The position numbers were made by a program, and so were the translations under genes. Of a stretch of 64,000 bases of DNA, positions 7,511 to 59,639 are shown in pieces. The notes under the pieces are model-generated. The model did no database searches. It had not been told where the DNA came from and saw only the letters and a list, made by a program, of their open reading frames with translations. The number at the start of each line of letters is the position of its first letter. Position 1 is the stretch's first letter. This stretch comes from Zootoca vivipara (taxonomy: Eukaryota), in NCBI RefSeq assembly GCF_963506605.1, contig NC_083281.1, forward strand, positions 57,784,001 through 57,848,000, written 5' to 3'.

Positions 7511-7923
7511 TAGCAATTTTCCTTCAGAAGAGGAGGGGGATGTCGCTCCCTCAGACAGCTGTGAAAGCAGTTCAAGATCATGGACGGGAACGGGGCTAAT
7601 GCAGGGGTGGGGAGCTGGGGGGGGTCTTCATGGCCCTCCAGGTGCTGCCGCAACTTCCAGCAGCCAGCATGGCCAGAGACGAGGATGGGAATTGATGTCC
7701 AACCATCCTCTGCTGGACCGGAAGTTCCCCAGCCATAGGTCATGGAATAGTAGAGTCGGAAGGGGCCGCGGGGGTAATCTAGTCCAAGTGGTGGTGGGTC
7801 GAGACCCGCTTGTGGGTCGCAACAGCAGCGCCACCGCTATGCAAATATGTGGTAAACGATTACAAGATCGGTCCCCAAATGCATGTTCGGTTAAAGGCGG
7901 GTCTAGAGACTGAAAAGGTTGAA

Positions 7924-8037
7924 ACAAAATAAAAAAAAATTGCTTCCAGTAGCACCTTAGAGACCAACTAAGTTTGTCATTGGTATGAGCTTTCATGTGC
8001 ATGCACACTTCTTCAGATACACTGAAACAGAAGTTGA
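7924..8037 (-). mobile_element. Short Penelope-like pLTR insertion (variant A)
   Basis: 17-bp direct repeat AGACTGAAAAGGTTGAA at 7907-7923 and 8038-8054. Homologous to the copies at 8.2, 29.6, 57.4 and 58.8 kb. Confidence 0.85.
7983..8020 (-). ncRNA. Minimal type I hammerhead ribozyme motif
   Basis: Minus strand reads GUAU-CUGAAGA-A-GUGUG CAUG CACAU-GAAA-GC-UC^AUAC. It has the conserved core CUGANGA/GAAA/UH, stem I GUAU:AUAC, a 5-bp stem II with a G.U closing pair, and a palindromic AGCU stem III. Confidence 0.8.
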
Positions 8038-8208
8038 AGACTGAAAAGGTTGAAGACTGCGGGTCTAGGAGACCTACAGCCAGCCGACAGAGGGGCAAAC
8101 GCGAGTCCCGCGCTCTCTAGCCAAAGTGGCTCGGATTGCAGCCGGTTGAGTTTTCAGAGGCCCGAAAATCCCACGCAGCAGAAGGGCCACTCTTACTCTT
8201 TATGTCTA

Positions 8209-8294
8209 AGCAAAATAAAAAAATTCCTTCAGTAGCACCTTAAAAGACCAACTAAGTTTTTATTTTGGTATGAGCTTTCGTGTGCATGCACACT
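8209..8294 (-). mobile_element. Short Penelope-like pLTR insertion (variant B), truncated within the hammerhead core
   Basis: 12-bp direct repeat TCTTTATGTCTA at 8197-8208 and 8295-8306. Retains stem II-GAAAGCUC-AUACC but not CUGA. Confidence 0.85.
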
Positions 8295-9015
8295 TCTTTA
8301 TGTCTAGGGTGACATAACCGGTTGTCCCGGCGACAGACGAGCCTCTTGGCCCGGGGGCGGGGCTTCTCCGGATCCGCCTCCTCCCGCCCTTCCTACGTCG
8401 GCGCCAATTCAGCCCCACCTCACACGGCTGGAGAGTCTGGCGGGGTGACTTACGCTGTTCACGCCCTTGCGAGTCACTCCTTGGCCGGGGGGGGGGGGTT
8501 GTCTGGCGCCTTTTGCGTCCAGCTGCCATCCTTTTATTCTGCATGGGTGTAATTGAGGGTCAATTCCTAGGATAACCTCCCATTCACTGCTGCAAAGCCT
8601 GCATTGGGTGCCAGGGCACAACCCCCTTACCACTGAAAGACAAATACACTGGGTCTTCAAAGGATGCCCCTCTCCCCTCACCAGAGCTCTCAGGACGCTG
8701 CAGATTTACTCCTGGAGCTGGCACCTCTTCAAGCCACGGTCCGAGGGCAGCTGCAGGGGCCTTCACCATGAGAGAACTTCTACCCTTGGGAGGTGCCTAT
8801 GCCTGGCCCTCATGGAGAAGTGAAACAATACCCCCCCCCTTTTAGATTTACTTTTAATAGTTAAAGAGAAGTCCCCACCACCACCACTGGCAATGTTTTT
8901 TAACCTTTTGTATGTTGATCTCCATCATAAAACGTGAAATATGACATTGTCATACCAAATTTAAAAACATAATAAAATAAAAAACAAAATAAACATAACA
9001 AGTTTAAAGAAAAGC

Positions 9016-9021: not shown

Positions 9022-10643
9022 GAAATACCACCCAGAAAAAGATCCACCTTCCTCTGAAGGCAAGGCAGGGAACAAAATCCCACAGCCCCCTCAGAGCAAT
9101 GCTGATCGTGCCCCCATCCTCAGCATCCTAAGTTCAAGAGTGGGGCTCTGGGATGAAACAGAGAAAATATTTCTGCCATACTCCCATTTTCCTTAATTCC
9201 ATCTGAGAGAGACTGAATCACACTGCAGACCTGACTCTGTTGGGTCTCAGCAGATGAGGGGAATTCCTTGACTTTGTCTTGCCTGAGGATATGCACAGAT
9301 CCTAGCCCTCTGTGTTGCTTGATAGTTTCCGATTAAAGAAGCCAGCCCAAGCCTGGCCTACTTGACTTGTGTCAATGTTTGCTCACACTTAGTACCTGCT
9401 GGTCAGCAAAAGTTTGTATTAAGAAGTACACTGTGAAGCTCTTAAGGGAGGCACTTTTTTGTTCCTTGCTGGAAAAACAATGGACCCAGCAGATCTTGAT
9501 GGAAGCCCCCCTGCCCTCATGTAAGGGAAGACGAGGGGGCCAGCAAGACTACGAGCAGAAACATGCTGGATGCTACCACGCTGACCTGGGCAAACAAGCA
9601 TCTCTATGCCCACAGAGTCCCTGCTGTCACACTAAGCCCATGCCAGGAGTCCTCAGAGGCCATGATCTGCACCCACAGCATCCTGCACACTCTGGAATCC
9701 TTGCTCCCTGCACAAAGGAGAAAACAGCACAGAGTGAGTAGATCAGTCTCTGGCCCTGCAGTCTTCTTGGTGCCTAGAAAGATAAAACCTCAACCCAAGC
9801 AAAGTCTGTATTTGCTTAAGATACCAGCTTCCCACTTGGGTCCCCACCTCCCTCCCCAGCTACAAAAGGTAAACAGAAAAGCTTATGCCTGTAGAGCAGA
9901 TCCTTGTACTTTGTAGGGAGGGGACCTGTGACCTGCAGGCGAGTCACAGGAAACCAAGGATGTGAAATACCCACAGGATCAGGACCACTTTCTCCTCTAC
10001 GTAGTACATATTTGATTGTTTGGATAAGACAACAGATGCACAGGTATACAGAATAGAAAGCAAGGTCTGTTATTACTTGTTTTGGGACTACTGTTGTCCC
10101 AGACGTCAATTGCTTTAAAGCTGCCAGGGCTCCATAGACCACAAAATGACACAAAGGAACTGTGGTGGAGATAAGGTAATTTGTCATGATGGAGGTGGAA
10201 AGTAATTTGAGACTGGAGGTAAGGGACAGGTGGAAGAACAAGCAGCAGCAGGGGCTTCCAAGAGAAGATGGGCCAGGGGCCAGGAAGCAGATCTGGAGGA
10301 AAGGCAGGCTGGCTGGCAAGCAGAGTGTGGGAGGAAGAGAAGGAATGGATGTAATAGGCAGAGCCAGAGACAAAGAACATCAAGCAAGGAGGACCAGGTA
10401 CTTGATGTAAAGAGTAACAGAGATCAGCTTCTTGCAGTGTAATTAGAGAGCATACATGCAAAAAGAAGCCTAGCATGACAACCTAGGTGGGAGACAGTTT
10501 TGTGATCTGCTCAGCTCCCTCTACAGCCCAATCTCATGCTAGCAGCAATCTCATTCTGCTGTGCTTTCTGATCAGCATAACTTTGCTTGAATCTGAAGTT
10601 ACATCATAATGTATCTGCAACACACAGCCAGATTGAGGGTCCA

Positions 10644-10780
10644 NNNNNNNNNNNNNNNNNNNNNNNNNNNNNNNNNNNNNNNNNNNNNNNNNNNNNNNNN
10701 NNNNNNNNNNNNNNNNNNNNNNNNNNNNNNNNNNNNNNNNNNNNNNNNNNNNNNNNNNNNNNNNNNNNNNNNNNNNNNNN
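10644..10780. other. Assembly gap (137 N), likely hiding the last DHODH coding exon
   Basis: Exon 8 ends in a donor at 10810, and no C-terminal exon is visible on either side of the gap. Confidence 0.9.
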
Positions 10781-10809
10781 CTGGGAGCTGGGCCTAGCCT
10801 GGCACTCAC

Positions 10810-13800
10810 CTTAACAGAGCCTCCAGCTCCTGTTTCACAACACCCACCACAGGTGGCCCACGGTAGGTGAGGGCAGTGTACATCTGCACCAAGGAGGCCC
10901 CTGCACGGATCTTGTCCAAGGCATCTTGCCCGCTGGAGACTCCACCTACACCAATGATGGGGACCCGTCCTGAGGGGGAAGAAGAGGCTGCTAGTGGGAG
11001 GGATTCTGGTGTCCCTCCTACCTGCACCCCCTCCCTCCCTCCCTCCAACCTCTATCTCCTTACCCTGGGTGAGAGAGTACATCTCGCTGACCAGCTGAGT
11101 GGAGAGGTCTCGCAGGGGAGCTCCGCTTAGACCCCCTACCTCCTCACGAAGAGCTGCACGCAAGGTGCTGGGGCGGCTCACAGTGGTGTTGGTGACCACC
11201 AGTCCATCAACGCCTAACTGGGAAAAAGGGAGCAGTGTCAAGCCTCAGAGCCGCAGCCTCCTCCTATGCGCTGCCCTCCTTCCCACAGTGGTGGCCCAGA
11301 AAGTCTAGCCCCGCCCCATTCTCACTCTTATTTAAAGAAAATTTATGAGACCACTTGATCAAAAATCTACAGTATATATCTCCCAAGCAGCGTACAAATA
11401 TAGCTTAAGCTAAAACACAGATGAAATCCACAGTTCACTAAAAGCAAAGGTATGTAAAGCCACCTCAATTCAAAACAAAGATAAATTCAATAAATACTTA
11501 AAGCCGATATAGGTGACTAAATTACATGTCTGGGTAGGCTTGCAAAAACAAAGGTTTTCCGGCAGAATCCAAGAAGAAGAAGAGTTTGGATTTAAAATCC
11601 CGCTTTATCACTACCCGAAGGAGTCTCAAAGTAGCTAACATTATCCTTTCCCTTCCTCCCCCACAACAAACACCCTGTGAGGTGGGTGGGGATGAGAGAC
11701 TTCAAAGAAGTGTGACTAGGCCAAGGTCACCCAGCAGCTGCATGTGGAGGAGCGGGGACGCGAACCCGGTTCCCCAGATTACGAGTCTACCGCTCTTAAC
11801 CACTACACCACACTGGCTCTCAATATAGTGAGGGTGTCTGCCCAGTATCAAGAAGCAGGAAGTTCCATGTGCTGTTATGCTTACAAGATTGCTTTTGCAA
11901 GGAGTGCAGAGTGGCAGGTGTAAAAGTGCAAGTTCCACTGATGGAAGTGATCAAAGAGGCCCACATGAGGCAAGGTGATCTCTTAAGGGAGCTGCTCTAG
12001 AACAAGGCATAAAAGGACAAACCAACCAGGAATAACTGAGGCATCAGCCAGGCAAAACTACCCCTGCCTGCCCACCCCTGCATCACCTCGGAGACAACAC
12101 TGGCAATGTCCTGCTTGTCTTGGGCTGTGAGGTCTGGAGCAATTTTCACCAGTACAGCCGGCTTGTGCTTGCATGCCAAAGCGTCCCTCTCAGCCAGCAC
12201 CTGCCAAGAAGCACAGAGCCGTCAGCCAAAGATCACGTTCACACTGCCCAGAAGGGCACATGATTACAAGCACAACACGGCTAGGAGAGGGGAACTGCCC
12301 CTGCTATAAACTAGGGACAGAAGCTGAGCTCTGCATAGCAGGAGAGGCTCAGCAGCAGGATCCAAAGGGCAGGTATGGAAGGAGGGGAAGACAGAAGCAG
12401 CCTCCTGTAGGTTCACCACCAACATCTGGAGTCAAGGCTGCTGCACATGTACAAGGTTCTCAATCAGGCACGCATTCAACTCCTGCAGTAGGATGTGTGA
12501 ACAATGTACCAGCAAAACCCTGGCCTTCCTTTGCCAGGCACTTTTTAATAAATGAGAAATGGGAGCAACAGGCTGCTTCTCCTTTGCTCCAATCAGCTGC
12601 TGCCCCCCGCGCAGAGAGCAAGCCCTAAATGTGTGCCAGAGAGCAGCCTGGTTGCTTACTGGAGGGGACCAAGAAGCTAGGTAATGCTCTTGGGGCAAGA
12701 GACCCACCTTGGCCAACAGGAGGCGCAGCTCCGCTTTGCCTTGAAGGGCCCGCAGTCCAGGCGTGTTGGGGCTGGAAATGTTCACCACCAGGTAATCGGC
12801 CAGCGGGCCCAGTACCCGCACACCTGCCACGTAGTCGGCTGCTGCATCCACAGAGGCCTTGTTCTTGCCAAGATTTATTCCAAGAGGCATACCCGCTAGG
12901 AAGGGGGAGTATGCACAAACAGAAGCCACTCAGACAGGGAGGGCGATAGCAAAGACGACTGCCACGTAAGGAATCCCTGATGAGGTGGGCAGACACACAA
13001 GAGATTTCCCTAGGGCCAAGGTGGGCCTGTCAGGGCTGGGCAAAAGGAAGCAGCCACTGGCACTGAGGCAGGCACCGCTCCTAACCAGAGATGCTCTGGG
13101 AAGGGTCCAGGGCAGGATCAAGAAATCCTCCACTAATCAATTGCATGATTATTTGCTCCTTGCCACTCTTCACGCTCCCTGAAAGCTCTTCTCCAGATCT
13201 GACTGCCACAAGCATGTACTAATACAGCAGCAATTGGGTGGGGGAAAGAAGGGAGCAGGGATTTTCCATGGCTCATGGGGTGGGAGGACACAAGCCACCT
13301 CACCTGAGCTGAGCTGAAGCTGAGTTTCTCGTCGGGCTTGAAGTCTGTGCTCCACCACTGCATGCCCGTGGCTGTTGAACCCATACCTAGAAAGTGGTGG
13401 ACACAGCTCAGGTAAATACCACCACCCCTCTCTTCCCCAATACATCACCACCTCCTCCACTGCAGGAGAGGTTTGTCAAAGGCTCACCCTCGCCACCCCC
13501 CTCTGTTCCAGCCTCCTACCTGTTAATAATGGCCTGGTCCTCTGGCAGCCGGAAGACACGGGGCCTAGGGTTCCCCTCTTGGGGCTCTGGGGTGACACTC
13601 CCCACCTCCACAAAGCCAAATCCCATCTTGTAGAGTCCATCTACAGCCTCTCCATGCTTGTCAAAACCAGCAGCCAGGCCAAGAGGGTTCCGAAACCGGC
13701 GCCCAAAGACTTCCACTGCCTGGGAAGCCAATTAAGCACCAGTTAACCAGCAGAAAGCCTTAGGCAGCAGAAGAGACGAGCAAGGCCCCATCCTGTCCCA

Positions 13801-16472: not shown

Positions 16473-19400
16473 ATGGCGTCACTTTCGCCGCGCCCCCTTC
16501 CCGGCGTGATGGCGCGCGGGAGAGGGAAGATGGCGGCCGGTAGCCGCGGAGCATCGCCCGAAGGAGCCGCGGAGGTTCGCGAAAAGGCCTTGGAGGAGAC
16601 GGTGAACCGCTGGACCCTCCTCTTCTATGCCCACCGGGCCCTTCAGGCTTTCCGGGCCGGCCGCAGCCAGGACTTTCGCCAGTTGCGGGACGTCATATAC
16701 GGTGGGGAGACCAGTTTGTTTTACGACAGGGCCGTTTGGGGAACATTCGCTCTCGGTTAAATAACTGCAAATGTACTTCCTGCTAAGGAACGTGAATGTA
16801 AATAACTAATAATAGTAATTTTATTAGTTATACCCTGCCCATCTACCTGGGTTTCCTCAGTCACTCTGGGCACATATCAGAACATACTAAAACATCAAAC
16901 ATCAAACATTAAAATTATTACTTATTTGCATTTATATATTACATTTAATAGTCATTAGGTGTTCTCATTTAAGAAAAAATGAACCTAAAGTGACCATATA
17001 ATACAATCTATGTCCCTGGAACGTTTGTCATTTGCCTTTAGAAATTAAGGGAAACGATTTTTAAAGAAAATGCACAAAGTACAACCAACCAACAGCACAG
17101 AACCCAGAAGGAAGGTCTGAAAACAGCGGCTGTGATTCTCAGGAAGATGGTTAGGAATGGATACATGCCCCCTTAACTGAATGCCTCCTAAGCTCATCAC
17201 AGATGGTCAGGAGAAATTGAGTTTAATGAGTTTTGGGTTCGGGCTGTAGTTGAGTGATGGTTTCCAGAAGCCAACTGTTAGGAATGGCCTAGCACCTTTG
17301 GAGTGTAGTTCTAACAAACTCAACTATTGTGCTTTACCATTCATTTTCTTACAGTAATTACTTCCGTGTGTCTATAAATAAAATCTGTACATACTGCATT
17401 TCTTTCCCACAAAACACAGCCCCAGCAAGATACCTCTCCATTAAGACACTAAAAAGCAATGTGTGTGTTTGTGTACATATAGATACTAAAGGATATTGTA
17501 GATAACACACACACACAAGCAAATGCAAAGTGACTCCTGGGCCAAAGGGCATGTTGGGATGAAGTTGGCTGTCTGTATATGGCCAGGGGTACAGGATATG
17601 GGGCAGGGCTTTGGTGCCCTGGCCCAAGCCTCGTTACACCTGGTTTGCTGAACTATCTGATTTTGCTTAGTGGCTGTTTTGACTGTTTTGTTATTCTCCA
17701 GCTGTGCTTGCGCGGCCCCTAGCACTAGAGAAATGCATTGGCATTCAGCTGCGGATTATCCAGTTTCTGTCTAGGATTGAAGAAGATTGGACCATTGATA
17801 CCAAGACCAAGTTAACACCTCTTGAACATGCCCTTGTTCTTTTGGATAAGATGAAGAATGAATTGGACATAGACATTGATGTAATAGAAGAAATAAGAAA
17901 AAAAATAAAGGAAGCAGTAAGTGTTAGCATTTCCTCTTCTGTAGGCACTGATTACTGTTTCTCAGCCTAGTTGGAAAGTATGAGGACAGCTGTCTTAAGT
18001 TTCAAAATGCAGTATTAGGAAATTTTATTTAAGGTGCTAATTCAATGGCAGGATTAACTCTTGCCTGTTTTTCTCCATGCTTAAATTAGACTTTTAAATA
18101 AGTTTACAAAAGTTAATAGAAGCAAGGAGGCAAGATTCTTGTATGATGGGATGAAATGAGAGAGAAATTTATCCTCAAAAGTGCCTGAGTTTATTGGAAC
18201 TCAGCATGTTTTGAAAACTTGTTTCCTTTGGGCGATCCAGGAAAAGTTCCTTGCAAACCATTATTTTGTCTTTCTTCTCCAGGCTGTTATAACCTGTCTA
18301 AAAAACAAAGAATACGAACAAGCCAGCAAGATCTTGAAGAAACACATGTCAAAGGACCCAAGTTCCCAGGTGAGCTTTCAGCAGGTATGAGTTCATGTCG
18401 CAGTTGTTGTTGTTAAAATGTGCCTCTTGTAGGGTCATTTCACTGCAAAGCAGAGTCATGGTTTGTCCTTCCCACATTCTCCAATTCAGTGAGTGTCTTA
18501 AATACTTGAGAGTTTATTGTCCTCCTTACGCAATGAGAAAAATTGCATCCGCAAGCAGCACACGTTGCTACAGATTGTGGTTCACATCTCTAGTCATTAT
18601 TCTTTCATGCATTTGTGACATTACCTATAGTGCTCTTGTGGTTTGGTTTGGTTTGGTTTGGTTTGGTTTGGTTTGTTTAAACTTCTAATGACTGCAAAGT
18701 AGTACTGAAAAACATTTCCCCTTGCTTAGAAATTGAGCTCAGTGTTGCAGAACATCATCCGAGAAAAAAACTTCGCTCATCCAGCCATCTGGAACTTCTC
18801 CTATAAAGCTTTCCAGCAGAGAATACTTCTATATTTAGAAAGCTGCTTGAGTGACTCTGAGCCCTTTCTCCTAGAGGTAAGCAAGGTTGAGATATGGGAT
18901 GTTGTAGTGGGAGTACAGCTCAGTAGTTGAGCATCTGCTTTGCATGCAGAAGGTCCCAAGTTCAATCCCTGGCATCTCTAGGTAGGACTGGGAATGTCCC
19001 CTGCTTGAAACCCTGGAGAGCCACTGTCACTCAATGTGTGGTGATAGGAAACTATATGAACCATTGGTCTGGCTTGGCATAAGGCAGCTTTCTTTCTTCA
19101 TATGTTCCTGTGTGTTGCTGGAGCACTTGAATATCACCCACATTGCTACAGCAGAATTCTTGCCGTCTAAACACTGTGATCAAAAAAGTACATTCAATAC
19201 CTAAGGCTTAAGACAGAAGCCTCCCTGGACAAACTATTATGTGTTTGGGAAATATTTTTTTGTGAAGAACAAAGTGCCCCACTGCAGAACAGCACAGGGC
19301 TCCAATGTCACATTTGACATATATCAAGCTTGTAACCTGACAATGTTTTGGACTAGCAATTCCCAACAGCTCAGCATCATGCGGCTGTGCTGTCTGGGGC

Positions 19401-25328: not shown

Positions 25329-28300
25329 TTTTTTTTTTTTTTAAATACATTTTATTCCGATTTTCCAAATTCAACAAATTAACAAAACCAATCTTTTATA
25401 CAAAATCTTATATTCACATCTTTTACCTTGCTCCGCCGAGCTATGACTTCCCCCCCTCCCTTCATGCGGGTTTCTTGTTAATTCCCTTTTTTGCAGTTCC
25501 TTTTTTAACATATTGGTCAATTCGTAAGGTTTATTTTAATCCTGCGAGAGTTTTTAATAATCTACAGTTTTTCTCCATATAGTCCACATATTTACTCCAG
25601 TCCTTTTGAAACCTTGTCTCCCCCTGGTCACGAATCTTGCATGTCAATCTAGCAAGTTCAGCATAGTCCATCATTTTTATCTGCCACTCCACAATTGTAG
25701 GTAATTCCTGTAGTTTCCATTTTTGGGCTAACAAAGTCCTAGCCGCGGTTGTTGCATACATAAACAGTGTTTGATCTTCTTTTCTAATCTCTCCTCCTAT
25801 TATTCCTAACAAAAATGCTTCTGGTTTTTTTGGGAAGGTATATCTAAACATCTTTTTCAATTCATTATATAAACTTTCCCAAAATCTTTTAACTTTTTCG
25901 CATGTCCACCACATATGATAAAATTCACCATCTTTCTCTTTACATTTCCAGCAACTTTTATCACTCATTCTATACATTTTAGCTAACTTAACTGGAGTTA
26001 AATACCATCTGTACATCATCTTATATACATTTTCTTTCAAGGCAGTACATGCTGTAAATCTTAAAGTTTGATTCCATAGTTTCAACCACGCATCATATTC
26101 AATATTATGCCCCAAATCTTTTGCCCATTTAATCATCACTTCTTTTGTCAACTCATCTTTTGTATACCACTCCAACAACAGATCATACATCTTTGTCAAA
26201 AGCTTTGTTTTGCCTTCTAGCACTTCTATTTGAAATTTGGATCTTTTATCCTCAAAACCTATTTTTCTATCTTCTTTAAGCACATCATTTATTTGATGGT
26301 ATTCTATCCATCCTGTTAACACTCCTTTAATGTCCTCAAAAGGTTTTAAACTCCATCCTTTTTCAGTTTTCGTCAAGATTTCCTCATACGTGGCCCGCCT
26401 CTTTTCCATATTTACTTTCTTAACTGTTAATACCTCTGCTGGTGAGACCCACCAGGGTGTTTTAGTCTCTAACAGCCTTTTATTTCTTTCCCACACCTCG
26501 TACAGAGATCTTCTTATCACATGATTCGTAAACCCGGTATGTGATTTCTTTTTGTCATAACATAAATATGCATGCCATCCAAATCTATTGTTAAAACCTT
26601 CCAAATCTAACAAGTCCGTATTCTCTAGAGTTATCCATTCTTTTATCCAACAGATACAGGACGCTTCGTAATAAAGTCTCAAGTCTGGCAGGGCGAATCC
26701 ACCTCTTTCTTTCTTATCTACCAAAATCTTATGTTTTATTCTAGGTTTTCTCCCCTGCCAGACAAATCTTGATAAAATCTTTTGCCACTCTTGGAATTGC
26801 CTCGTACCTTTAACCACAGGTATAGTTTGAAATAGGAATAACATCTTAGGTAATACATTCATTTTTATTGTTGCAATTCTTCCTAAGAATGACATTTTCA
26901 TATTAGTCCATCTTTCCAGGTCTTTCTTTATTTCCTTCCATACTTGTTCGTAATTATCACTGTAAAGATTAATATTCTTTGCTGTCATCCATATTCCCAA
27001 ATATTTTACCTTTTTAGCCACGTCGAGTCCATGTTTTAACTGTAATTCCTGTTTTTCTTCTTTCGACATATTCATTGCCATAACCTTGGTTTTTTGTCTA
27101 TTTAATTTGAATCCTGCCAATTGACCAAATTTCTCCATTACTTCTATAGCTTCTGCAACACTTTCCTTTGGATTTTCCAATGTTAAAACTAAATCATCTG
27201 CGAAGGCTTTCACTTTAAATTGCTTTGCACCTACCTTAATACCTCTAATTGTAGATAGGTCTCTTAATCTGATCAATAATATTTCCAGGACCATGATGAA
27301 CAATAACGGTGATAAAGGGCAACCCTGTCTAGTTCCTTTTGTGATTTCAAAATATTCTGTTAGGGTGTTATTAATTATCAATCTTGCCTTTTGCTCTGAA
27401 TAGATCGCCTCGATCCCATTCACGAATGTATTCTTCCCAACCATTGATTCCAAATTCCTCTTCATGAATTGCCAAGATATATTGTCAAAAGCTTTCTCAG
27501 CATCTACAAACATCAAGACAGCTGGTTTATCTATCTTGGTCTCCAGATATTCTATTACATCTATTATGTGTCTTACATTATCCTTTAGCTGTCTACCAGG
27601 AAGAAAACCAGCCTGATCCTTATGTATTATTTGATTTAAAACTTCTTTCAATCTCTTGGACATTATATCTGCAAAGAGTTTGTAATCATTATTCAATAAT
27701 GAGATTGGTCTATAATTTTTGACTTCTAAGCCATCCGTATCCGGCTTTGGGATCAATGTTATGTATGCCTCTTTCCATGTATTTGGGATCTTTCCCCCCA
27801 ACAGAATATCATTCATCATTTCCTCTAAAACTGGAACCAACAGTTCATTCAGTACTTTATAATATTTCGCCGTTAAACCATCTGGTCCTGGTGCTTTACC
27901 TTGTTTCATTCTCCCTATTGCTTGTTGTACTTCTTGTGTCGTTATCCTGTTATTTAGCTTTTTCCTCTCTTCTTCTGGAATTGGTTTCAATCCATATTTT
28001 CCTAGATACTCACTGATCTTCTTCTCATCTTCTTTCTTTTTGCAATACAAATCCTTATAGAATTTTTGAAAGGTTTTCTTAATCTCCTTTGAATCTTCCG
28101 TCGTTCCTCCCTCTGTTTTAATCTTAGTTATTATGTTCTGATTTTGACGTTTCCTTAACTGCCAAGCCAACAGTTTTCCTGTTTTATTCGCCGATTCGAA
28201 ATTTCTTTGTCTCATTTGTTTTATTTTCCACTCAATCTCCTGATTGATCAACATGGAGAATTGTGTCTGTAACATCTTTATATTATTCTTTATTTGCTGA

Positions 28301-28775
28301 TTCTCGGGTTTATCAATCAGGTTCTTCTCATTTTCCATGAGACATTTCAAAATTTCTTCTTTCTTCCTTTCTTTCGTTTCAGAAAACTGTTTTGCTGTAT
28401 TAGAAAGCCTCTCATCACTGCTTTACTTGCATCCCATACCATATCCAGTCCGGTATCCTTGTATAAATTCCAATGAAAATAGTCTTTCAGGGTCTTCTTA
28501 GCTTTCGAGACCACCTCTTTATCATCAAATAAATCTTCGTTCATTCTCCACCTGAAGGACTTTTGGTCTTTGTTTTTCAATTCCATGAATATAGAGTTAT
28601 GGTCTGACAGTGTACGTGGTATTATCTCTGTTTTACTCACCCTGGGCACTAGTTCCTTGGAGATCCACATGTTATCTATCCTTCCCGAACTCTGATTTGG
28701 TTCTGAGAAGAATGTAAATTGTTTAGTTGTAGGGTGCCTCAGTCTCCAAATATCCACTAGACCCAGGTTTTCTAT
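25329..28775 (-). mobile_element. Young 5'-truncated L1-clade LINE
   Basis: Poly(A) tail (T run from 25329), AATAAA, and a perfect 18-bp TSD AATATCCTTTTAGATTTG at 25311-25328 and 28776-28793. Confidence 0.95.
25531..28757 (-). CDS. L1 ORF2p (partial APE endonuclease, reverse transcriptase, CCHC knuckle), one frameshift near 28350
   Basis: 28757-28347: APE C-terminus (DIWR, GRID, SDH). 28350-25531: 939 aa with KAPGPDG, YRPISLLN, DAEKAFD, GTRQGCPLSP, FADD, KYLGI and CWKC...HMWWTC. Confidence 0.93.
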
Positions 28776-29620
28776 AATATCCTTTTAGATTTGGATTAAG
28801 ACGTAAGATATTAGTGAATGGTTCAAAAGAGAAGGCAAGGAGCAGTGGCGACAAGGGACAACCTTGTTTTGTCCCGTCCCCGTCCCCCCCTCCCCGAGAT
28901 TGCAGTTGCTGAGGAGTCCATGTTATTAATTCTTAGAGTAGCTGAATTATTTGAATAGAGTTTAGCTATTGCTGTAATAAGGTGATTGCCTAGTTGGCAT
29001 GTCTGCAAAATCTTAAGAGATAACACCATTCCAGACCATCAAAGGCTTTGTAAATATCTAAGGAACATAAAGCCAAGAAGAATGGTTTGGTGAGGAATTG
29101 TGAATCACATTCAGCAAACAGTCTTCTTATGGGATTCAAGATATGCCCAAGGGCTATGTTTCGTCTATATGTATTAAATTCCTAATTATTAGATTTAAAT
29201 GTGCAACTAAAATTGAGAAGAATATAATCTGGTCCTGATTCAATAAGGTAATTGGCTCGTATGAGCACACCTGTGCTTCATGCCTGGCTTTAGAAGGACA
29301 GTTATTCTGGATCAACACCTATGTATCAGCGCCTGATTACTCTTGCAAGATGGATAAAGTTGACAAACATAAAAGTGCGAGTAGGTCTTTGTATTTCTTT
29401 AAAAATGTTGCCAAGCCCATCGGGACAAGGGCTCTTATACAATACTTCAGTTAATAGCTTGATCAATTCCTTCTGCAGAATGTTATCTTTTGTTGTGCTT
29501 TCTTTGTTAAAGGTTTGATACCACATCTTCTCACTTAATTTTTTTTCAGGTAAAGGGTTTTTTGAGTTATATAGCTCTTTATAAAACTCCATAAACATAT
29601 TACCAATCTGATTTTAGTCC

Positions 29621-29726
29621 TAGTTACAGGTAGGACTGTAGCCGTGTTGGTCTGCCGTAGTCGAAACAAAATAATTTCCCCCCTTTCCAGTAGCACCTTA
29701 GAGACCAACTAAGTTTGTCATTGGTA
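29621..29726 (-). mobile_element. Short Penelope-like pLTR fragment (variant A) without ribozyme core
   Basis: Matches 7924-7985 and the reverse complement of 57465-57564. Carries the common 3' terminus ...CCTACCTGTAACTA. Confidence 0.85.
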
Positions 29727-39244: not shown

Positions 39245-42200
39245 ATGGCAGCCCCGGAGCCTTCGGCGGACCTAGAGGAGGCGAGCCTGTTGGCATGGCT
39301 GTTCCGCGGGGCGACCTCGCCGCTGCCTCCGCCCCTGGCGGCGGGGGACGCGGAGCTGGCGACCTACCTGGCGGCGCTGGCGGGGCTGGGCCTGGAGGCC
39401 TTGCGGAGGGAACCCGGCCGGTTGGCGGAGGAGCGAGCCCAGCTCGGGGCGCAGACACGGGCCTTGGCCTTCGCCCACTACAAGACCTTCATCCGCTCCG
39501 CGGAATGCACCGCTGAGACGCGTCGGGGCTTCGGTGGCATCGAGCAGGGCCTCGACCGCCTCTTGGGCCGCCTCCCACCCTTCTCCGAGGCTTGCCGGTG
39601 AGCAGGAGGAGGTGGAGGCCAAGGCTGCCGCCACACTCGCTTTGGGGGCAGGAATAATCCTGGGGCGCCCCACCGTTAACTTATGGAACTCACTGCTATT
39701 GGAATGGGTGGGTTAGAGGGGGCTGGCTGGCTTCCCCTTTTGCTTTTCCTAGCCTAACCTGCTTTCTTCTTCTTTTGCTCCTGCCTCCAGGAACTTCATG
39801 CAGGAGGCTGAACAGATCGCCCAGAACCGCCGTATGAACAGCCTGACCCTGAACCTCCACACAGAGATCCTGGAAGTGCTGGAGATCCCCCAGCTGATGG
39901 ACACCTGCGTCCGCAACAGTTACTACGAGGAGGCCCTGGAGCTGGTGTCCTACGTCCGCCGCCTGGAGAAGAAGCATGCCACCATCCCTGTCATCCAGGT
40001 GCAGACATGTTCTGAGCCTGGCAGGTGCCAGTGCTGCCTTAAGCCATACGGTGATAATAGGTCCCAGCCATTTGCTTCTAGAGTTTCAGGACCTGAGCAA
40101 AAGCTTAGCGAAGAAAGGCCTCTCCAACCCTTTGCATTTGTTTTCTCTGCCATGGCTCACAGAGGCAGAGGTGAGGTGGCTTCTGTGCTGGTTTCCTAAG
40201 TTTGATCCAGGTTGTTTGATTGCCTAAGGATACCTGAGGCCCACAATCCTGGACCATCATGAGCTGTCATGTTTTGCTTGTAGAAGCCAGAATATTTCTG
40301 GATCTGATGCTTCTTCTCTTGTTACTTTTCTTCTTGACTAAGTGCTTATTGCAGCCAGGGTTTGTGCATGTTCTGTAGGGATCTACTTCTTTGACTTTCA
40401 ACAAGAGCAGGGTACAAGCCATTGATCTCTTAAGTGCAATCTGTAAAGCAGGGATAGATAGAAGGTAGACTAATCACTGGACTAATGACTCTTGGCTAAT
40501 GTCTAATTTGCTAGTTGCAGGGATTCTTGTACAGAAAGCTGAGATGAAGCAGGCCCTGTTCTGACCCAGTAAAGCCCTTCTTCCATCTGCAAAGAAGAAT
40601 GCATTCTTAAGGTCACAACACTTTGTTTATTTACCACGTTTATATCCCACTCTTCCTCCCAAAGGAACTCAGAATGACAGCAAGTTATACCTCTTTAAAA
40701 GTTCCCAAAAGTACACATCATTATAAAATGCAGTTACCTCATACCAGGTTTGACTTTGCACTAAGCCCAATATTGTCTACTCTGGAAGCCAGAGTATATC
40801 TAGTATATCAAGCAAGTATATCTGCCACTGACGTGTAGACTCTCTCATAAGTGATCACATGGATGGACCATAAGGACTACAGTATTGAGATCAGCTTGGT
40901 TTGGGTAGCATGGGTAACAAAAGTTTATTTTGTCTCTCTTCTCCTTCCCAGGGCATAGTGGCAGAGGTGCGCCAGTCCACACAGCTCATGCTTACACAGC
41001 TGATCCAGCAGCTTCGCACCAACATTCAGCTGCCAGCCTGCTTGCGCATCATTGGCTACCTTCGCTGCATGGATGTCTTCACTGAGGCTGAGCTACGAAT
41101 TACTTTCCTGCAGGCACGGGACATCTGGCTACGTTCTATCCTTGCTGCTGTTCCTGGTGACGACCCCTATGTGCATATTACCAAGACCATTGAGGCCTGC
41201 CGCGTGCACCTCTTTGACATTGTCACGCAGTACCGTGCCATTTTTGCTGACGAGGAGCCGCTGGTGCCTCCCCCTGGGCAGGACACCCTCAATGAAAGTG
41301 CCATCTTCCATGGGTGGGTCCTGCAGAAGGTCTCCCAGTTCCTGCTGGTGCTTGAGCATGACTTGCAACGTGGTGTGGGCAGCCGCCTTGACTCCCTGCT
41401 GGGCCAGTGCATGTACTTTGGCCTCTCGTTCAGCCGTGTTGGAGCAGACTTCCGGGGCTTGCTCATCCCCATATTTCAGCGGGTGGCACTGGTCACCTTC
41501 AAGAGAGCCATGCAGGAAGCTGTGAACAAATTCCAGGAGGAGATGAACTCCTACACGCTAATCTCTGTGCCGGCTGCTTTGGGCAGCAGCAGCAGCACCA
41601 CCATCCCTGTAGCAGTGGCTCCTTCTGCCCAGCCAGGCACTCTGCAGCCCCCCATGGTGCTGCTAGATTTCCCACCACTCGCCTGCTTCCTCAACAACAT
41701 CCTGGTAGCCTTCAATGACCTGCGCCTCTGCTGCCCTGTGGCTCTTGCCCCAGATGTGGCAGCTACCCTGGAGGATGCACTTGGCCAGGTGGGGCTCTGC
41801 TGCTCATGTGCACCAAGAGGCTGGATTAAAAATGCTCCAGATGTCTAGGTGACAGGACAGAAATTTGCTAGTAGCAGAGTTTTAGCTGCTTGCAGCCTTA
41901 TCTTTAGTCATACTCCTTGGATTTTTCTAGGTTCTTTTCAGCAACTTGGCAGGTCATGTTTGTGAGTTTATGCCTGTTCCCTCCCATGTTGCTGCTGTCT
42001 GTTTGTTCAGGGGTGGGCCTCTGCCTTATTTCAAGAAGCCCTTTGCAAGCAACCAGTTCAGGCATCTGACAACAGCAATCAGTCCCTGCTTTGGGTGGGC
42101 TGGAAGAGAGAGAGAGGAGAGAGAAAGTGGTTGACCTCACCTGTTTTTGCTTCTGAGCCTGCTCTAACCCCACCCATAGTCAGCACATGGCCCCTGCTGG

Positions 42201-45745: not shown

Positions 45746-47133
45746 ATGGCAGTATATAGGCTAAGGCCTGGCTTGGCCTGGATGCTGGACAGCCTCCGCT
45801 GGAACAGAGCTTTCCTGGCACGTTTACCATGCAAAAGTTGCAGCCGCACTTGTTTTTCTCCGGCAGAGAAGCAGCGCACCTATTGGCAATATCTGCGGCG
45901 CAAAGTCTTGAAACCTCCCACCCCACCCTACAGCCACGTCTGCCAGGTGGGGGACCCCATTCTGCGCTCCCTGGCTGCCCCCGTGGAGCCCTCACAGATT
46001 GCCAGTGGTGAGGTGCAGACCCTCATCCGTACTTTGGTTCGCGTGATGAGGAAAGAACAATGTGTGGGTCTCAGCGCTCCCCAAGTGGGCGTGCCACTCC
46101 AGATCTTTGTGGCGGAGTTCCCCGAGAGGCTCTTTCATGAGCACACCCCCAGTATGCGCCAGGCTTGCCAGATGGCCCCCTTCCCCCTGCGTGTGGTAGT
46201 GAATCCATCCATGAGGGTGCTGGACTCCCAACTGGTCTCTTTCCCTGAGGGCTGTCAAAGCATCAGTGGATTCTCTGCTTGCGTCCCAAGATACCAAGCC
46301 GTGGCGGTTTCTGGTGAGCAGGCAATGTTATTCCTTGTAGCTTTAACACACTTGGATGAGGTGTGAGTTTTGGAGCTGGTATAGGTGTGTGGCGAGCCTC
46401 AGGTGTTCAAACTTGGCTCTATGTTGATCTTACAGGGTGTTATTAATGCAAAGGGTAATCTACATTATGCATTCCAATTGTGGGAACATAGCTAAATACA
46501 AACTCGTGGCACAAACACCAAACTTCTTTTTCCCACACTGCCTGTCAAAATGCGCATGTTTTAATGCCAAAGCATTTCATCAGTAGCACACTCACATGTT
46601 GCTCTTCTGTTATGTGGTGTGACTGTGGACAAGAGGTGTTGCAAGGGACATTTTATGTATGAAAAACGGAATGGGGAGAGTGGGTGGATCAGGGGCATCA
46701 GTTTCTCCTGCTTACTTACGCTGTCCTGCTGTGGAATATTTCATAAGTCTCACTCTTCTAATTTTTGACAGGACTGAGGGGCACAGCTGGTTTCAATAAG
46801 TGCCAGCAAAAAAGCAGGGACAGGTAGATATTCTCTGGGTGCAGGGAGCCTGCACTGGGCCTACAGCTTGGGGAAAGTTCAGTCAGATGTTCCTTCAAGG
46901 GGAGTGAGTCATTAAGGCATGGCAGGACCCCAGAGCTGCATTTCTCACTGGAGTTCCTCTTTTTCCTTTCCCCAGGTCTGAATGAAGTCGGGGAGCAGTT
47001 TAGCTGGCCGGCAAGTGGCTGGGCAGCCCGTATCATCCAGCATGAGATGGACCATATGCAGGGTGTGTTGTATATTGACAAGATGAACAGCAGGACTTTT
47101 GCGAATCTGCAGTGGGAACAGCTAAACGAGTAA
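45746..47133 (+). CDS. PDF: Peptide deformylase, mitochondrial (241 aa)
   Basis: Exons 45746-46313 and 46976-47133. Motifs [19 protein letters not shown]; Arg-rich N-terminal presequence. Confidence 0.95.
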
Positions 47134-49791: not shown

Positions 49792-58127
<8,336 letters not shown>

Positions 58128-58500: not shown

Positions 58501-58825
58501 TGATGGCTGAGTTATGGCTGTATTTGCATTATCAAATTTGCCGGGAGTCTCCTTTTCTGACCTTTTGCTTAGCGTAGCAGGAAACGCTTCTAAACACCAG
58601 TTGCTGGGAATTGCATGTGCAGAAAGTGCTTATGTGCCCAGGTGCTTTTTGTGGGCTTCCCCTAAAGGCATCTTGTTGGTCATTGAGCTTTGCAACTCTT
58701 TTTTTCCCCTTTTCCCTACAGGCAAATGCCTAGCAGTAGATGGATGTTAATCTGAGAGCCACTTTCTCCTGCTGAAATACTTGAACATCAGTAGCACAAC
58801 TTGCTATTTCACAACCACTGTCAAG

Positions 58826-59013
58826 ACCAACTAAGTTTTTATTTTGGTATGAGCTTTCGTGTGCATGCACACTTCTTCAGATACCTAAGATACTTAAGTG
58901 TGCATGCACACGAAAGCTCATACCAAAATAAAAACTTAGTTGGTCTTTAAGGTGCTACTGAAGGATTTTTTTTTATTTTGCTTCGACTAAGACAAACACA
59001 GCTACCTACCTGT
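58826..59013 (+). mobile_element. Penelope-like pLTR insertion with inverted 5' copy (variant B)
   Basis: 13-bp TSD AACCACTGTCAAG at 58813-58825 and 59014-59026. Perfect 52-bp inverted repeat at 58823-58874 / 58896-58947. Confidence 0.88.
58846..58885 (-). ncRNA. Minimal type I hammerhead ribozyme motif (intact)
   Basis: Minus strand reads GGUAU-CUGAAGA-A-GUGUG CAUG CACAC-GAAA-GC-UC^AUACC: 5-bp stem I, 5-bp stem II, palindromic stem III. Confidence 0.85.
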
Positions 59014-59639
59014 AACCACTGTCAAGTTACTATAAATCCCATTCCAAACCAAGTCCCTGTGTTTTGTCTCAACATTTTAAACTTGCCAGATTATTTTTAA
59101 CTCTTGAGATACGTGAACATGATTACGCTGATACTTTGTGTTTGGGGCACAAATAGTTTATTTTGTAGGTAGTTGCCTCCTTGGGTTTACAGTACTTCCA
59201 AAAAGCGGAAGAATTAACAGACCTTTATTTCCTTTAGTGCGAAACTGAGGGAAACTGTGGCTTTGTGGTCTGGTTGCATTCAGGGTTTGAGCTACCAGGT
59301 GGAAACACCACGAAACTCGGAAAAACATGCTTCTGAATTACAAGTGCACAGATTTAGTTGGTGTTTGAAAACAAGGAGCCTAATGTGACACAAGTCAGCA
59401 CCTTATTATAAGATGGCAGTGGATGCACTGGACCGTTGCCTTGCCTCGGTAATGGACTGGATGAGAGCCAACGAACTGAAGCTCAATTCCACATAAGACT
59501 GAGGCACTATTAGTGGGTAACCCCCCCCCCCTAGACTGGATGGCTGGGAAGTTGCCTGCTCTTGATGAGGTTACACTTCCTCTGAAGGAGCAGGTATGTA
59601 GCTTGGGGGTACGGTACTTCCAGATCTTTTACTGTCAGG

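What the first reader, a model, noticed from the sequence alone, without database searches (positions are those of the whole stretch)
7924..8037. Family of tiny Penelope-derived insertions carrying a minimal hammerhead ribozyme
Seen: five homologous 85-190 bp insertions (7924-8037, 8209-8294, 29621-29726, 57408-57562, 58826-59013) in two sequence variants, four with 12-17 bp TSDs. The copy here folds on the minus strand as stem I GUAU / CUGAAGA / extra A / stem II GUGUG-CAUG-CACAU / GAAA / palindromic AGCU / cleavage C^AUAC (predicted cut between 7987 and 7986). Known: PLE pLTRs contain minimal type I hammerheads with a palindromic stem III that cleave mainly as dimers. Inference: an abundant non-coding, retrozyme-like PLE derivative. 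Five copies in 64 kb imply a high genomic copy number. I cannot tell whether this family is already catalogued.
Basis: partly seen in the sequence, partly recalled or inferred. Interest (0 to 1): 0.8.

Follow-up and report, generated by a model that had tools for sequence, protein, structure and literature searches.

The report
Truncated Penelope retroelement ends with hammerhead
The five short insertions are real, dead, 5'-truncated end pieces of a very abundant Penelope-like retrotransposon of a lizard-type genome, two of them still carrying the family's minimal hammerhead ribozyme motif; this is a clean example of a published kind of element, not a new one.

Summary
Five loci (7924-8037, 8209-8294, 29611-29726, 57404-57566, 58826-59013) belong to one repeat family in two sequence variants. 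Three have exact target-site duplications (TSDs) of 17, 12 and 13 bp; one has only 6 bp and one has none.

A minimal-hammerhead descriptor finds exactly two motifs in the 64 kb, both in this family, and none in 300 shuffles.

The anatomy is that of Penelope-like element (PLE) insertions:
- every arm has a different 5' end;
- there are two alternative 3' ends about 45 nt apart, which matches the PLE "tail";
- two loci are head-to-head inverted pairs with the tail on one arm only;
- the ribozyme has the published PLE min-HHR features: an extra base after A9, G10.1-C11.1, a palindromic AGCU and no loop 3.

Reads show a very high copy number, transcription on both strands inside other transcripts, no read ends piled at the cut site and no well-supported circle junction. 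Other copies extend further 5'.

"Penelope-derived and abundant" is therefore supported. "Retrozyme-like" is not: the copies are not in tandem, the HHR is not canonical and no circles were seen. I could not link the family to an RT/GIY-YIG ORF. Earlier notes of this scan describe the same kind of element elsewhere in this genome. Known kind, low interest.

The parts
7924..8037 (-). Copy A, variant 1: 114-bp insertion. It runs from 17 nt upstream of the hammerhead to the short 3' end.
   Evidence: bounded by the 17-bp TSD
7907..7923 (.). TSD of copy A, left copy (AGACTGAAAAGGTTGAA). The right copy is at 8038-8054.
7983..8020 (-). Minimal type I hammerhead motif of copy A. Helix I is 4 bp and there is a bulged A after A9. 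Helix II is 5 bp, with G.U at 10.1-11.1 from CpG decay. AGCU is palindromic with no loop 3. Predicted cut is between 7987 and 7986.
   Evidence: family majority has C at 11.1 (7995 A>G in about 85% of reads)
8209..8294 (-). Copy B, variant 2: 86-bp insertion, 5'-truncated at the bulged A, so it lacks the CUGAAGA box. Short 3' end. 12-bp TSD at 8197-8208 / 8295-8306.
29611..29726 (-). Copy C, variant 1: starts 1 nt 3' of the predicted cleavage site and runs to the long 3' end (with tail). No hammerhead, no TSD.
57404..57466 (-). Copy D, arm 1 (inverted arm): 5'-truncated downstream of the cut site, short 3' end without tail.
57467..57566 (+). Copy D, arm 2: 5'-truncated 2 nt after the cut site, long 3' end with tail. 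Head-to-head with arm 1. Only a 6-bp TSD (ACTAAC).
58826..58886 (-). Copy E, arm 1, variant 2: intact hammerhead motif at 58846-58885 (helix I 5 bp, G10.1-C11.1). This arm ends at the left edge of the insertion after only about 21 nt of post-cleavage sequence, far short of the usual 3' ends.
58887..59013 (+). Copy E, arm 2, variant 2: 5'-truncated inside the CUGAAGA box, long 3' end with tail. 13-bp TSD at 58813-58825 / 59014-59026.

Best explanation
These are dead-on-arrival, 5'-truncated insertions of the 3'-terminal part of a Penelope-like retrotransposon (PLE).

**How the insertions arose (inferred from the published PLE mechanism)**
- The family's sense strand is the window's minus strand for copies A, B and C.
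- The PLE enzyme nicks the target. It starts reverse transcription inside the element RNA at one of two sites about 45 nt apart, roughly 66 and 111 nt downstream of the hammerhead cut site. This gives copies without or with the 'tail'.
- It then copies towards the RNA 5' end and usually stops early.
- When both target strands are used as primers, a head-to-head inverted pair results (copies D and E).

**The ribozyme**
- The hammerhead is the minimal PLE type. It has no helix III of its own, only a palindromic AGCU, so it could cleave only when paired with a second copy or helped by the element's protein.
- In these solitary, decayed copies it is a passenger motif with no role at the loci. This last step is inference.
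For: **Shown**
- One family, five loci.
- All seven arms have different 5' ends. There are only two classes of 3' end: short in A, B and D1, and long (+42-48 nt) in C, D2 and E2.
- Reads from other copies run on into the same tail sequence with 0.95 agreement.
- D and E are inverted head-to-head pairs with the tail on one arm only. This is the layout Craig et al. 2021 describe for PLEs.
- Frangieh et al. 2024 explain that layout by two internal RT start sites and extension of both target strands.
- TSDs of variable length: 12, 13 and 17 bp.
- The min-HHR descriptor gives 2 hits against 0 in 300 shuffles.
- The motif has the bulged base between 9 and 10.1, G10.1-C11.1 and palindromic 15.2-16.2. 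Cervera & de la Pena give these as PLE min-HHR traits that were not part of their descriptor, and report such motifs in turtle and snakes.
- The Anolis Poseidon hammerhead in that paper's supplement has the same architecture with a different sequence.
- The RNA downstream of the cut site folds with a GUUGGUCU/AGACCAAC stem whose AC-rich 3' strand lies in the tail. This recalls the AC-rich stem-loop where PAc starts reverse transcription.
- Other copies extend further 5' with a conserved sequence (loose ends behind 8034, agreement 0.7-0.86).

**Leads only**
- Earlier notes of this scan report intact Neptune-type PLEs in the same genome.
Against: - No RT/GIY-YIG ORF is physically linked to any copy in the window. 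The only RT ORF (25531-28350, minus strand) continues an L1-type endonuclease remnant.
- The autonomous parent of this exact family was not seen by me.
- The tail here is 42-48 nt, a little longer than the published 30-40 bp.
- Most family members seem to end near the 5' edge of the hammerhead (depth falls after 8020; diverse loose ends at 8020 and just past the 5' edge of helix I in reads overhanging copy B at 8298). That could instead mean a discrete non-autonomous unit.
- Self-cleavage is untested.
Confidence: 0.8

Rival explanations
1. A self-sustaining non-autonomous mini-element, SINE-like or retrozyme-like. It would be a unit of about 130-180 nt running from the hammerhead's 5' edge to the RT start site. 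It would be transcribed on its own and copied in trans by PLE enzyme, possibly through cleaved or circular RNA.
For: - Very high copy number.
- Depth drops to about 5-15% upstream of the hammerhead. Loose ends with low agreement at 8020, and just past the 5' edge of helix I in reads overhanging copy B at 8298, suggest many copies end there.
- Two subfamilies have shared diagnostic changes.
- Copies C and D2 start 1-2 nt from the predicted cut site.
- A few low-depth head-to-tail joints appear in contigs (table 5c).
- Li et al. 2026 show that vertebrate retrozymes derive from PLE pLTRs.
Against: - There are no tandem copies in the window.
- No two of the seven arms end at the 5' edge of the hammerhead: E1 ends 1 nt before helix I, and the only 5' ends shared within 1 nt are those of B and E2, inside the ribozyme.
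- The only promoter-like sequence seen (TATATATAA in the loose-end consensus) lies upstream of the common 5' end, so the short copies would not carry it (inference).
- RNA reads come from both strands, and 97-98% of them run on into unrelated sequence. This fits passive transcription.
- No read ends pile at the cut site and no back-joint lies there.
- The HHR is the minimal type, not the canonical retrozyme type.
Confidence: 0.15
2. An unrelated SINE, or a fold-back DNA transposon, that carries a hammerhead-like string by chance.
For: - Rfam hammerhead models give no hit even at E<=10.
- D and E look like fold-back elements with TSDs.
- No stem covariation is visible between the two variants.
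Against: - The descriptor gives 0 hits in 300 shuffles against 2 in the family.
- The motif also has the three PLE-specific traits that were not in my core pattern's logic: the bulge, G10.1-C11.1 and the palindromic helix III.
- The same sequence occurs as single arms in A, B and C.
- TSD length varies from 12 to 17 bp, unlike DNA transposons.
- There is no tRNA, 7SL or 5S head and no poly(A).
Confidence: 0.03

Closest known systems
Minimal hammerheads (min-HHR) of metazoan Penelope-like elements (Cervera & de la Pena 2014, PMC4209133)
   Same: - CUGANGA...GAAA...UH core.
- Helix I of 4-5 bp.
- One unpaired base between A9 and 10.1.
- G10.1-C11.1.
- Palindromic 15.2-16.2 with no loop 3, which implies action as a dimer.
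- Mostly dispersed single motifs from truncated PLEs; reported in reptiles (turtle, snakes).
   Different: - Helix II is 5-6 bp here, against 7-8 bp in the Schistosoma families.
- This exact sequence was not found in any searchable paper.
- Activity is untested.
Poseidon_Ac (PAc) of Anolis carolinensis (Frangieh et al. 2024, PMC11167929)
   Same: - Hammerhead of the same architecture: CUGAGGA-U-helix II-GAAA-CG-UC^.
- Two internal RT start sites give an optional tail.
- Both target strands are extended.
- No RNA-seq read ends at the cut site, as here.
   Different: - The sequences are unrelated.
- In PAc the ORF starts inside the hammerhead. Here no frame is conserved downstream of it.
- RT starts lie about 66 and 111 nt after the cut site here, against about 85-92 nt in PAc.
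- The tail is about 45 nt here, against 30-40.
Metazoan non-LTR retrozymes (Cervera & de la Pena 2020, PMC7229834; Li et al. 2026 preprint)
   Same: - Non-coding, carry a type I hammerhead and are related to PLE pLTRs.
- Abundant.
- TSDs longer than 4 bp.
   Different: - Retrozymes are head-to-tail tandem repeats with canonical HHRs and give circRNAs of 170-400 nt.
- Here the copies are dispersed or inverted, the HHR is minimal and no circle junction is seen.

Membership tests
Penelope-like element (PLE) insertion | Hammerhead core CUGANGA / GAAA / UH with helices I and II | tested here: met
   Descriptor script: 7983-8020(-) and 58846-58885(-); 0 hits in 300 shuffles.
Penelope-like element (PLE) insertion | PLE min-HHR traits: unpaired base between 9 and 10.1, G10.1-C11.1, palindromic 15.2-16.2 without loop 3 | tested here: met
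   - Bulged A and AGCU are present in both motifs.
- G-C is present in variant 2 and in about 85% of family reads (7995 A>G).
- Copy A has G.U at a decayed CpG.
- Criteria taken from PMC4209133.
Penelope-like element (PLE) insertion | Strong 5' truncation with a fixed 3' end region | tested here: met
   Seven arms have seven different 5' ends and two classes of 3' end.
Penelope-like element (PLE) insertion | Optional 30-40 bp 'tail', often at one end only | tested here: met
   An extension of 42-48 nt is present in C, D2 and E2 and absent in A, B and D1. It is one-sided in the inverted pair D; in E the arm without a tail stops much earlier. Other copies' reads continue into it. It is slightly longer than published.
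Penelope-like element (PLE) insertion | Inverted 5'-truncated copy adjacent at the 5' end | tested here: met
   Loci D (57404-57566) and E (58826-59013). Many 'opposite strands' joints in reads.
Penelope-like element (PLE) insertion | Physical link to an ORF with telomerase-like RT and GIY-YIG endonuclease | not testable with these tools
   - No PLE ORF lies in the window. The only RT ORF is L1-like.
- The rest of the genome is not searchable here.
- Exact-pattern scans of metagenome and viral contigs gave 0 hits.
Penelope-like element (PLE) insertion | Self-cleavage of the hammerhead | tested here: inconclusive
   Two RNA runs show no pile of read ends at 7986/7987 and flat depth across it. 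Standard libraries capture such ends poorly, and the same negative was reported for PAc.
Metazoan non-LTR retrozyme | Head-to-tail tandem repeats of 150-450 bp, each with an HHR | tested here: not met
   No tandem copy in the window. Only rare low-depth head-to-tail joints in contigs.
Metazoan non-LTR retrozyme | Canonical type I HHR with loop 1-loop 2 contacts and a short helix III hairpin | tested here: not met
   Helix I is 4-5 bp with no pairing beyond it in copy A, and there is no helix III hairpin. No Rfam hammerhead hit at E<=10.
Metazoan non-LTR retrozyme | Unit-length circular RNA | tested here: inconclusive
   No back-joint at the cut site among the listed joints in two RNA runs. Only about 6% of each run was read, and these are not circRNA libraries.
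Pol III SINE | tRNA/7SL/5S-derived head and LINE-type or A-rich tail | tested here: not met
   No Rfam hit over copies A and B. No A-rich 3' end.

The most novel reading that the evidence does not exclude
The short pieces may not be mere truncation debris. They could be a discrete, still-amplifying PLE-dependent mini-retroposon. In that reading, the 5' end is set by a transcription start just upstream of the hammerhead or by ribozyme cleavage (copies C and D2 begin 1-2 nt from the cut site). The 3' stem-loop would be the only signal the PLE enzyme needs. That would make it a PLE-driven analogue of a SINE in an amniote, at roughly 1e4-1e5 copies.
Probability: 0.15. Interest if true: 0.5.

Novelty: new member of a known kind. 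Interest (0 to 1): 0.2.

Why it matters
It matters little beyond annotation. These pieces should be masked as Penelope-type repeats and not read as functional ribozymes in the DHODH/DHX38 interval.

The family is a tidy natural illustration of three published PLE features: two RT start sites (the tail), priming from both target strands, and the dimer-dependent minimal hammerhead. Its very high copy number makes it usable for a genome-wide test of whether 5' ends cluster at the cleavage site. That test would bear on the open question of whether PLE hammerheads cut in vivo.

Tried and rejected
- **Rfam cmscan.** I ran it at gathering threshold on the whole window and at E<=10 on 7880-8320 and 58780-59040. 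There was no hammerhead hit. The microRNA-like hits at locus E only reflect its long inverted repeat.
- **ORF continuing from the hammerhead, as in Anolis PAc.** Variant 1 is open in one frame, but variant 2 has stops in all frames and the T-run length varies from 18 to 20 nt. I rejected the idea and spent no large protein search on it.
- **PLE ORF in the window.** The 939-aa RVT_1 ORF at 25531-28350(-) follows an L1-type endonuclease remnant, so it is a LINE.
- **Exact-pattern scans.** Two metagenome-contig scans and one viral-contig scan for the hammerhead and for the conserved downstream block gave 0 hits.
- **Full-text search** for the hammerhead string: 0 papers.
- **Supplement of the 2014 paper:** not held.
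- **Scan notebook by sequence:** blank, which means nothing.
- **RNAcofold of the dimer**. The minimal region folds into helices I and II as a monomer (-6.1 and -10.1 kcal/mol). The dimer MFE pairs the palindromic helix II between molecules. AGCU/AGCU alone is only -3.9 kcal/mol, and the true dimer hammerhead is not nested. The calculation neither supports nor refutes activity.
- **Stem covariation between variants:** none beyond C/U at 11.1, which is uninformative.

Full report
**1. What is there**

I oriented all arms on the strand that carries the hammerhead and aligned them. This gives seven arms:
- A (7924-8037, minus)
- B (8209-8294, minus)
- C (29611-29726, minus)
- D1/D2 (57404-57466 minus, 57467-57566 plus)
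- E1/E2 (58826-58886 minus, 58887-59013 plus)

Variant 1 (A, C, D) and variant 2 (B, E) differ by a block just after the hammerhead (CCAATGACAAAC against CCAAAATAAAAAC) and a few other positions.

Exact target-site duplications flank A (17 bp), B (12 bp) and E (13 bp). D has only 6 exact bases and C has none. The coordinates are otherwise accurate to the base.

**2. The hammerhead**

On the minus strand, 8020->7983 reads GUAU CUGAAGA A GUGUG CAUG CACAU GAAA GC UC^AUAC.

I wrote a descriptor with these requirements:
- helix I of at least 4 bp;
- the CUGANGA box;
- an optional single bulge;
- helix II of at least 4 bp;
- GAAA, a complementary 15.2/16.2 pair, then U and H.

It finds two hits in 64 kb on both strands, in A and E1, and none in 300 dinucleotide-preserving shuffles.

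Rfam's hammerhead models do not report the motif even at E<=10. I take this to reflect the missing helix III hairpin; that reason is my inference.

Copy A has U at 11.1 (a G.U pair). Variant 2 has C, and so do about 85% of reads from the family (7995 A>G). The U is therefore a CpG decay of this copy. The neighbouring G12 is lost in about 12% of reads (7994 C>T), which is again CpG decay. B and E2 are truncated inside the ribozyme. C and D lack it.

**3. What kind of element**

The published diagnostic traits of PLE minimal hammerheads are all present (Cervera & de la Pena 2014, PMC4209133):
- G10.1-C11.1;
- palindromic 15.2-16.2;
- a short helix I.

That paper also reports such motifs in turtle and snakes. 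The Anolis Poseidon element has the same architecture with an unrelated sequence: CUGAGGA-U-helix II-GAAA-CG-UC^ (supplement of PMC11167929).

Independently of the ribozyme, the insertion anatomy is that of PLEs:
- All seven 5' ends differ.
- The 3' ends fall in two classes. The short class ends at ...AUUUUGU(UUC), about 66 nt after the cut site (A, B, D1). The long class is 42-48 nt longer and ends at ...CCUACCUGUAAC(UAGGACUA) (C, D2, E2).
- D and E are head-to-head inverted pairs in which only one arm has the extension.

Craig et al. 2021 list exactly these features as PLE hallmarks (PMC8557442): high 5' truncation, an adjacent inverted truncated copy, and a 30-40 bp tail often at one end. 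Frangieh et al. 2024 explain them by two internal reverse-transcription start sites and by cleavage and extension of both target strands (PMC11167929).

The RNA downstream of the cut site is predicted to pair GUUGGUCU with AGACCAAC, and the AC-rich 3' strand lies in the tail. This is at least reminiscent of the AC-rich stem-loop where the Anolis enzyme starts. That resemblance is an inference.

**4. Reads** (two RNA raw-read runs and two contig sets of the same organism, laid on 7800-8400)

- *Copy number.* 7,072 contig records of one run match at 90% or better. Summed depth is about 1e6 on the element against 9-30 on the flanks. The tool warns that this is not a copy number. Five loci per 64 kb extrapolate to the same order, 1e4-1e5 (inference).
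- *Transcription.* Thousands of RNA reads match, on both strands and with no consistent bias. 97-98% of them run on into unrelated sequence, and the flanks of this locus have zero RNA depth. The reads therefore come from other copies embedded in host transcripts. This locus is silent in these samples.
- *Cleavage.* No place where molecules begin or end is reported. Depth is flat across 7986/7987. The listed joints are mostly 'opposite strands', meaning inverted pairs elsewhere. Only a few low-depth head-to-tail joints appear, mainly in contigs, and none is at the cut site. This does not exclude cleavage: the same negative was published for the Anolis element, whose ribozyme needs the element's protein in vitro.
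- *Extent of the family.* Reads overhanging the short 3' ends of A and B continue into the tail sequence (agreement 0.95). Reads overhanging A's 5' end at 8034 continue with a conserved sequence that contains TATATATAA about 22-24 nt upstream of helix I (agreement 0.7-0.86). Longer copies therefore exist.
- *5' ends.* Depth drops to roughly 5-15% beyond the hammerhead. Low-agreement loose ends sit at 8020, and just past the 5' edge of helix I in reads overhanging copy B at 8298. This suggests that many copies end at the hammerhead's 5' edge.

**5. Interpretation**

The best-supported reading is that these are dead, 5'-truncated insertions of the 3'-terminal part of a PLE. The part comprises the end of the pLTR with the hammerhead, plus the stretch up to the RT start sites. 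I put confidence in this reading at about 0.8.

The hammerhead is a passenger in these copies. It has no helix III of its own and could act only with a second copy or with the element's protein. At locus E the 60-nt inverted arms would in any case fold into a hairpin instead.

The main rival is a discrete non-autonomous mini-retroposon, at about 0.15. It is kept alive by the apparent excess of copies ending at the hammerhead's 5' edge, and by two arms (C, D2) that begin 1-2 nt from the cut site.

'Retrozyme-like' fails the defining tests of PMC7229834. There are no tandem repeats, the hammerhead is not canonical and no circles are seen.

**6. What I could not do**

I could not link the family to an RT/GIY-YIG ORF.
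- The window's only RT ORF is an L1-like LINE.
- No frame is conserved downstream of the hammerhead.
- Public contig collections hold no exact match.
- No searchable paper holds the motif string.

Earlier notes of this scan describe the same kind of short Penelope hammerhead pieces elsewhere in this genome. They call the genome a lacertid-type lizard. They also describe intact Neptune-type PLEs there. I treat these as leads. My independent results agree with their verdict that this is a known kind of element.

**7. Verdict**

This is a new member of a known kind, with interest 0.2.

Noticed in passing
window 25531-28757 (-): A long LINE remnant. A 939-aa ORF carries an RVT_1 domain (E 5e-41). 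It is preceded, in another frame, by the C-terminal part of an L1-type AP endonuclease. It lies about 850 bp downstream (minus strand) of copy C but is unrelated to it.
   Followed up: partly
window 58826-59013: Locus E is a near-perfect inverted repeat with arms of about 60 nt each. Rfam microRNA-precursor models score it at E 1e-7 to 1e-10 but far below their gathering scores. This is a hairpin artefact of a head-to-head insertion, not a miRNA gene.
   Followed up: partly
window 7907-7923 / 8032-8054: At copy A the target ends in GGTTGAA. This matches the element's own sequence at the short RT start (UUCGAC/UUCAAC on the sense strand) and also the first bases of the insertion's 5' end. It suggests microhomology at both junctions.
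   Followed up: no
loose ends behind 8034 (other copies of the family, not this window): Longer family members carry TATATATAA about 22-24 nt upstream of helix I, and the stretch just before helix I (CUUCUGUUUCAG) looks like a 3' splice site. In Drosophila virilis Penelope an intron ends at the 5' edge of helix I (PMC4209133). Either feature could explain a common 5' end.
   Followed up: no
window 10534-11241 (-), 40901-41848 (+), 45746-46366 (+), 18909-18980 (+): Host context: exon-sized ORFs with DHO_dh, Dor1 (COG8-like) and peptide deformylase domains, and a tRNA-like sequence (39.7 bits) that may be a tRNA-derived SINE head. This is consistent with a vertebrate DHODH-COG8-PDF neighbourhood.
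   Followed up: partly
window 7983-8294: Copies A and B lie 170 bp apart in the same orientation. B keeps GAAA and the cut site but lacks the CUGAAGA box. Another note of this scan (s1-849442) proposes a split hammerhead. RNA depth between them is zero in two runs.
   Followed up: partly
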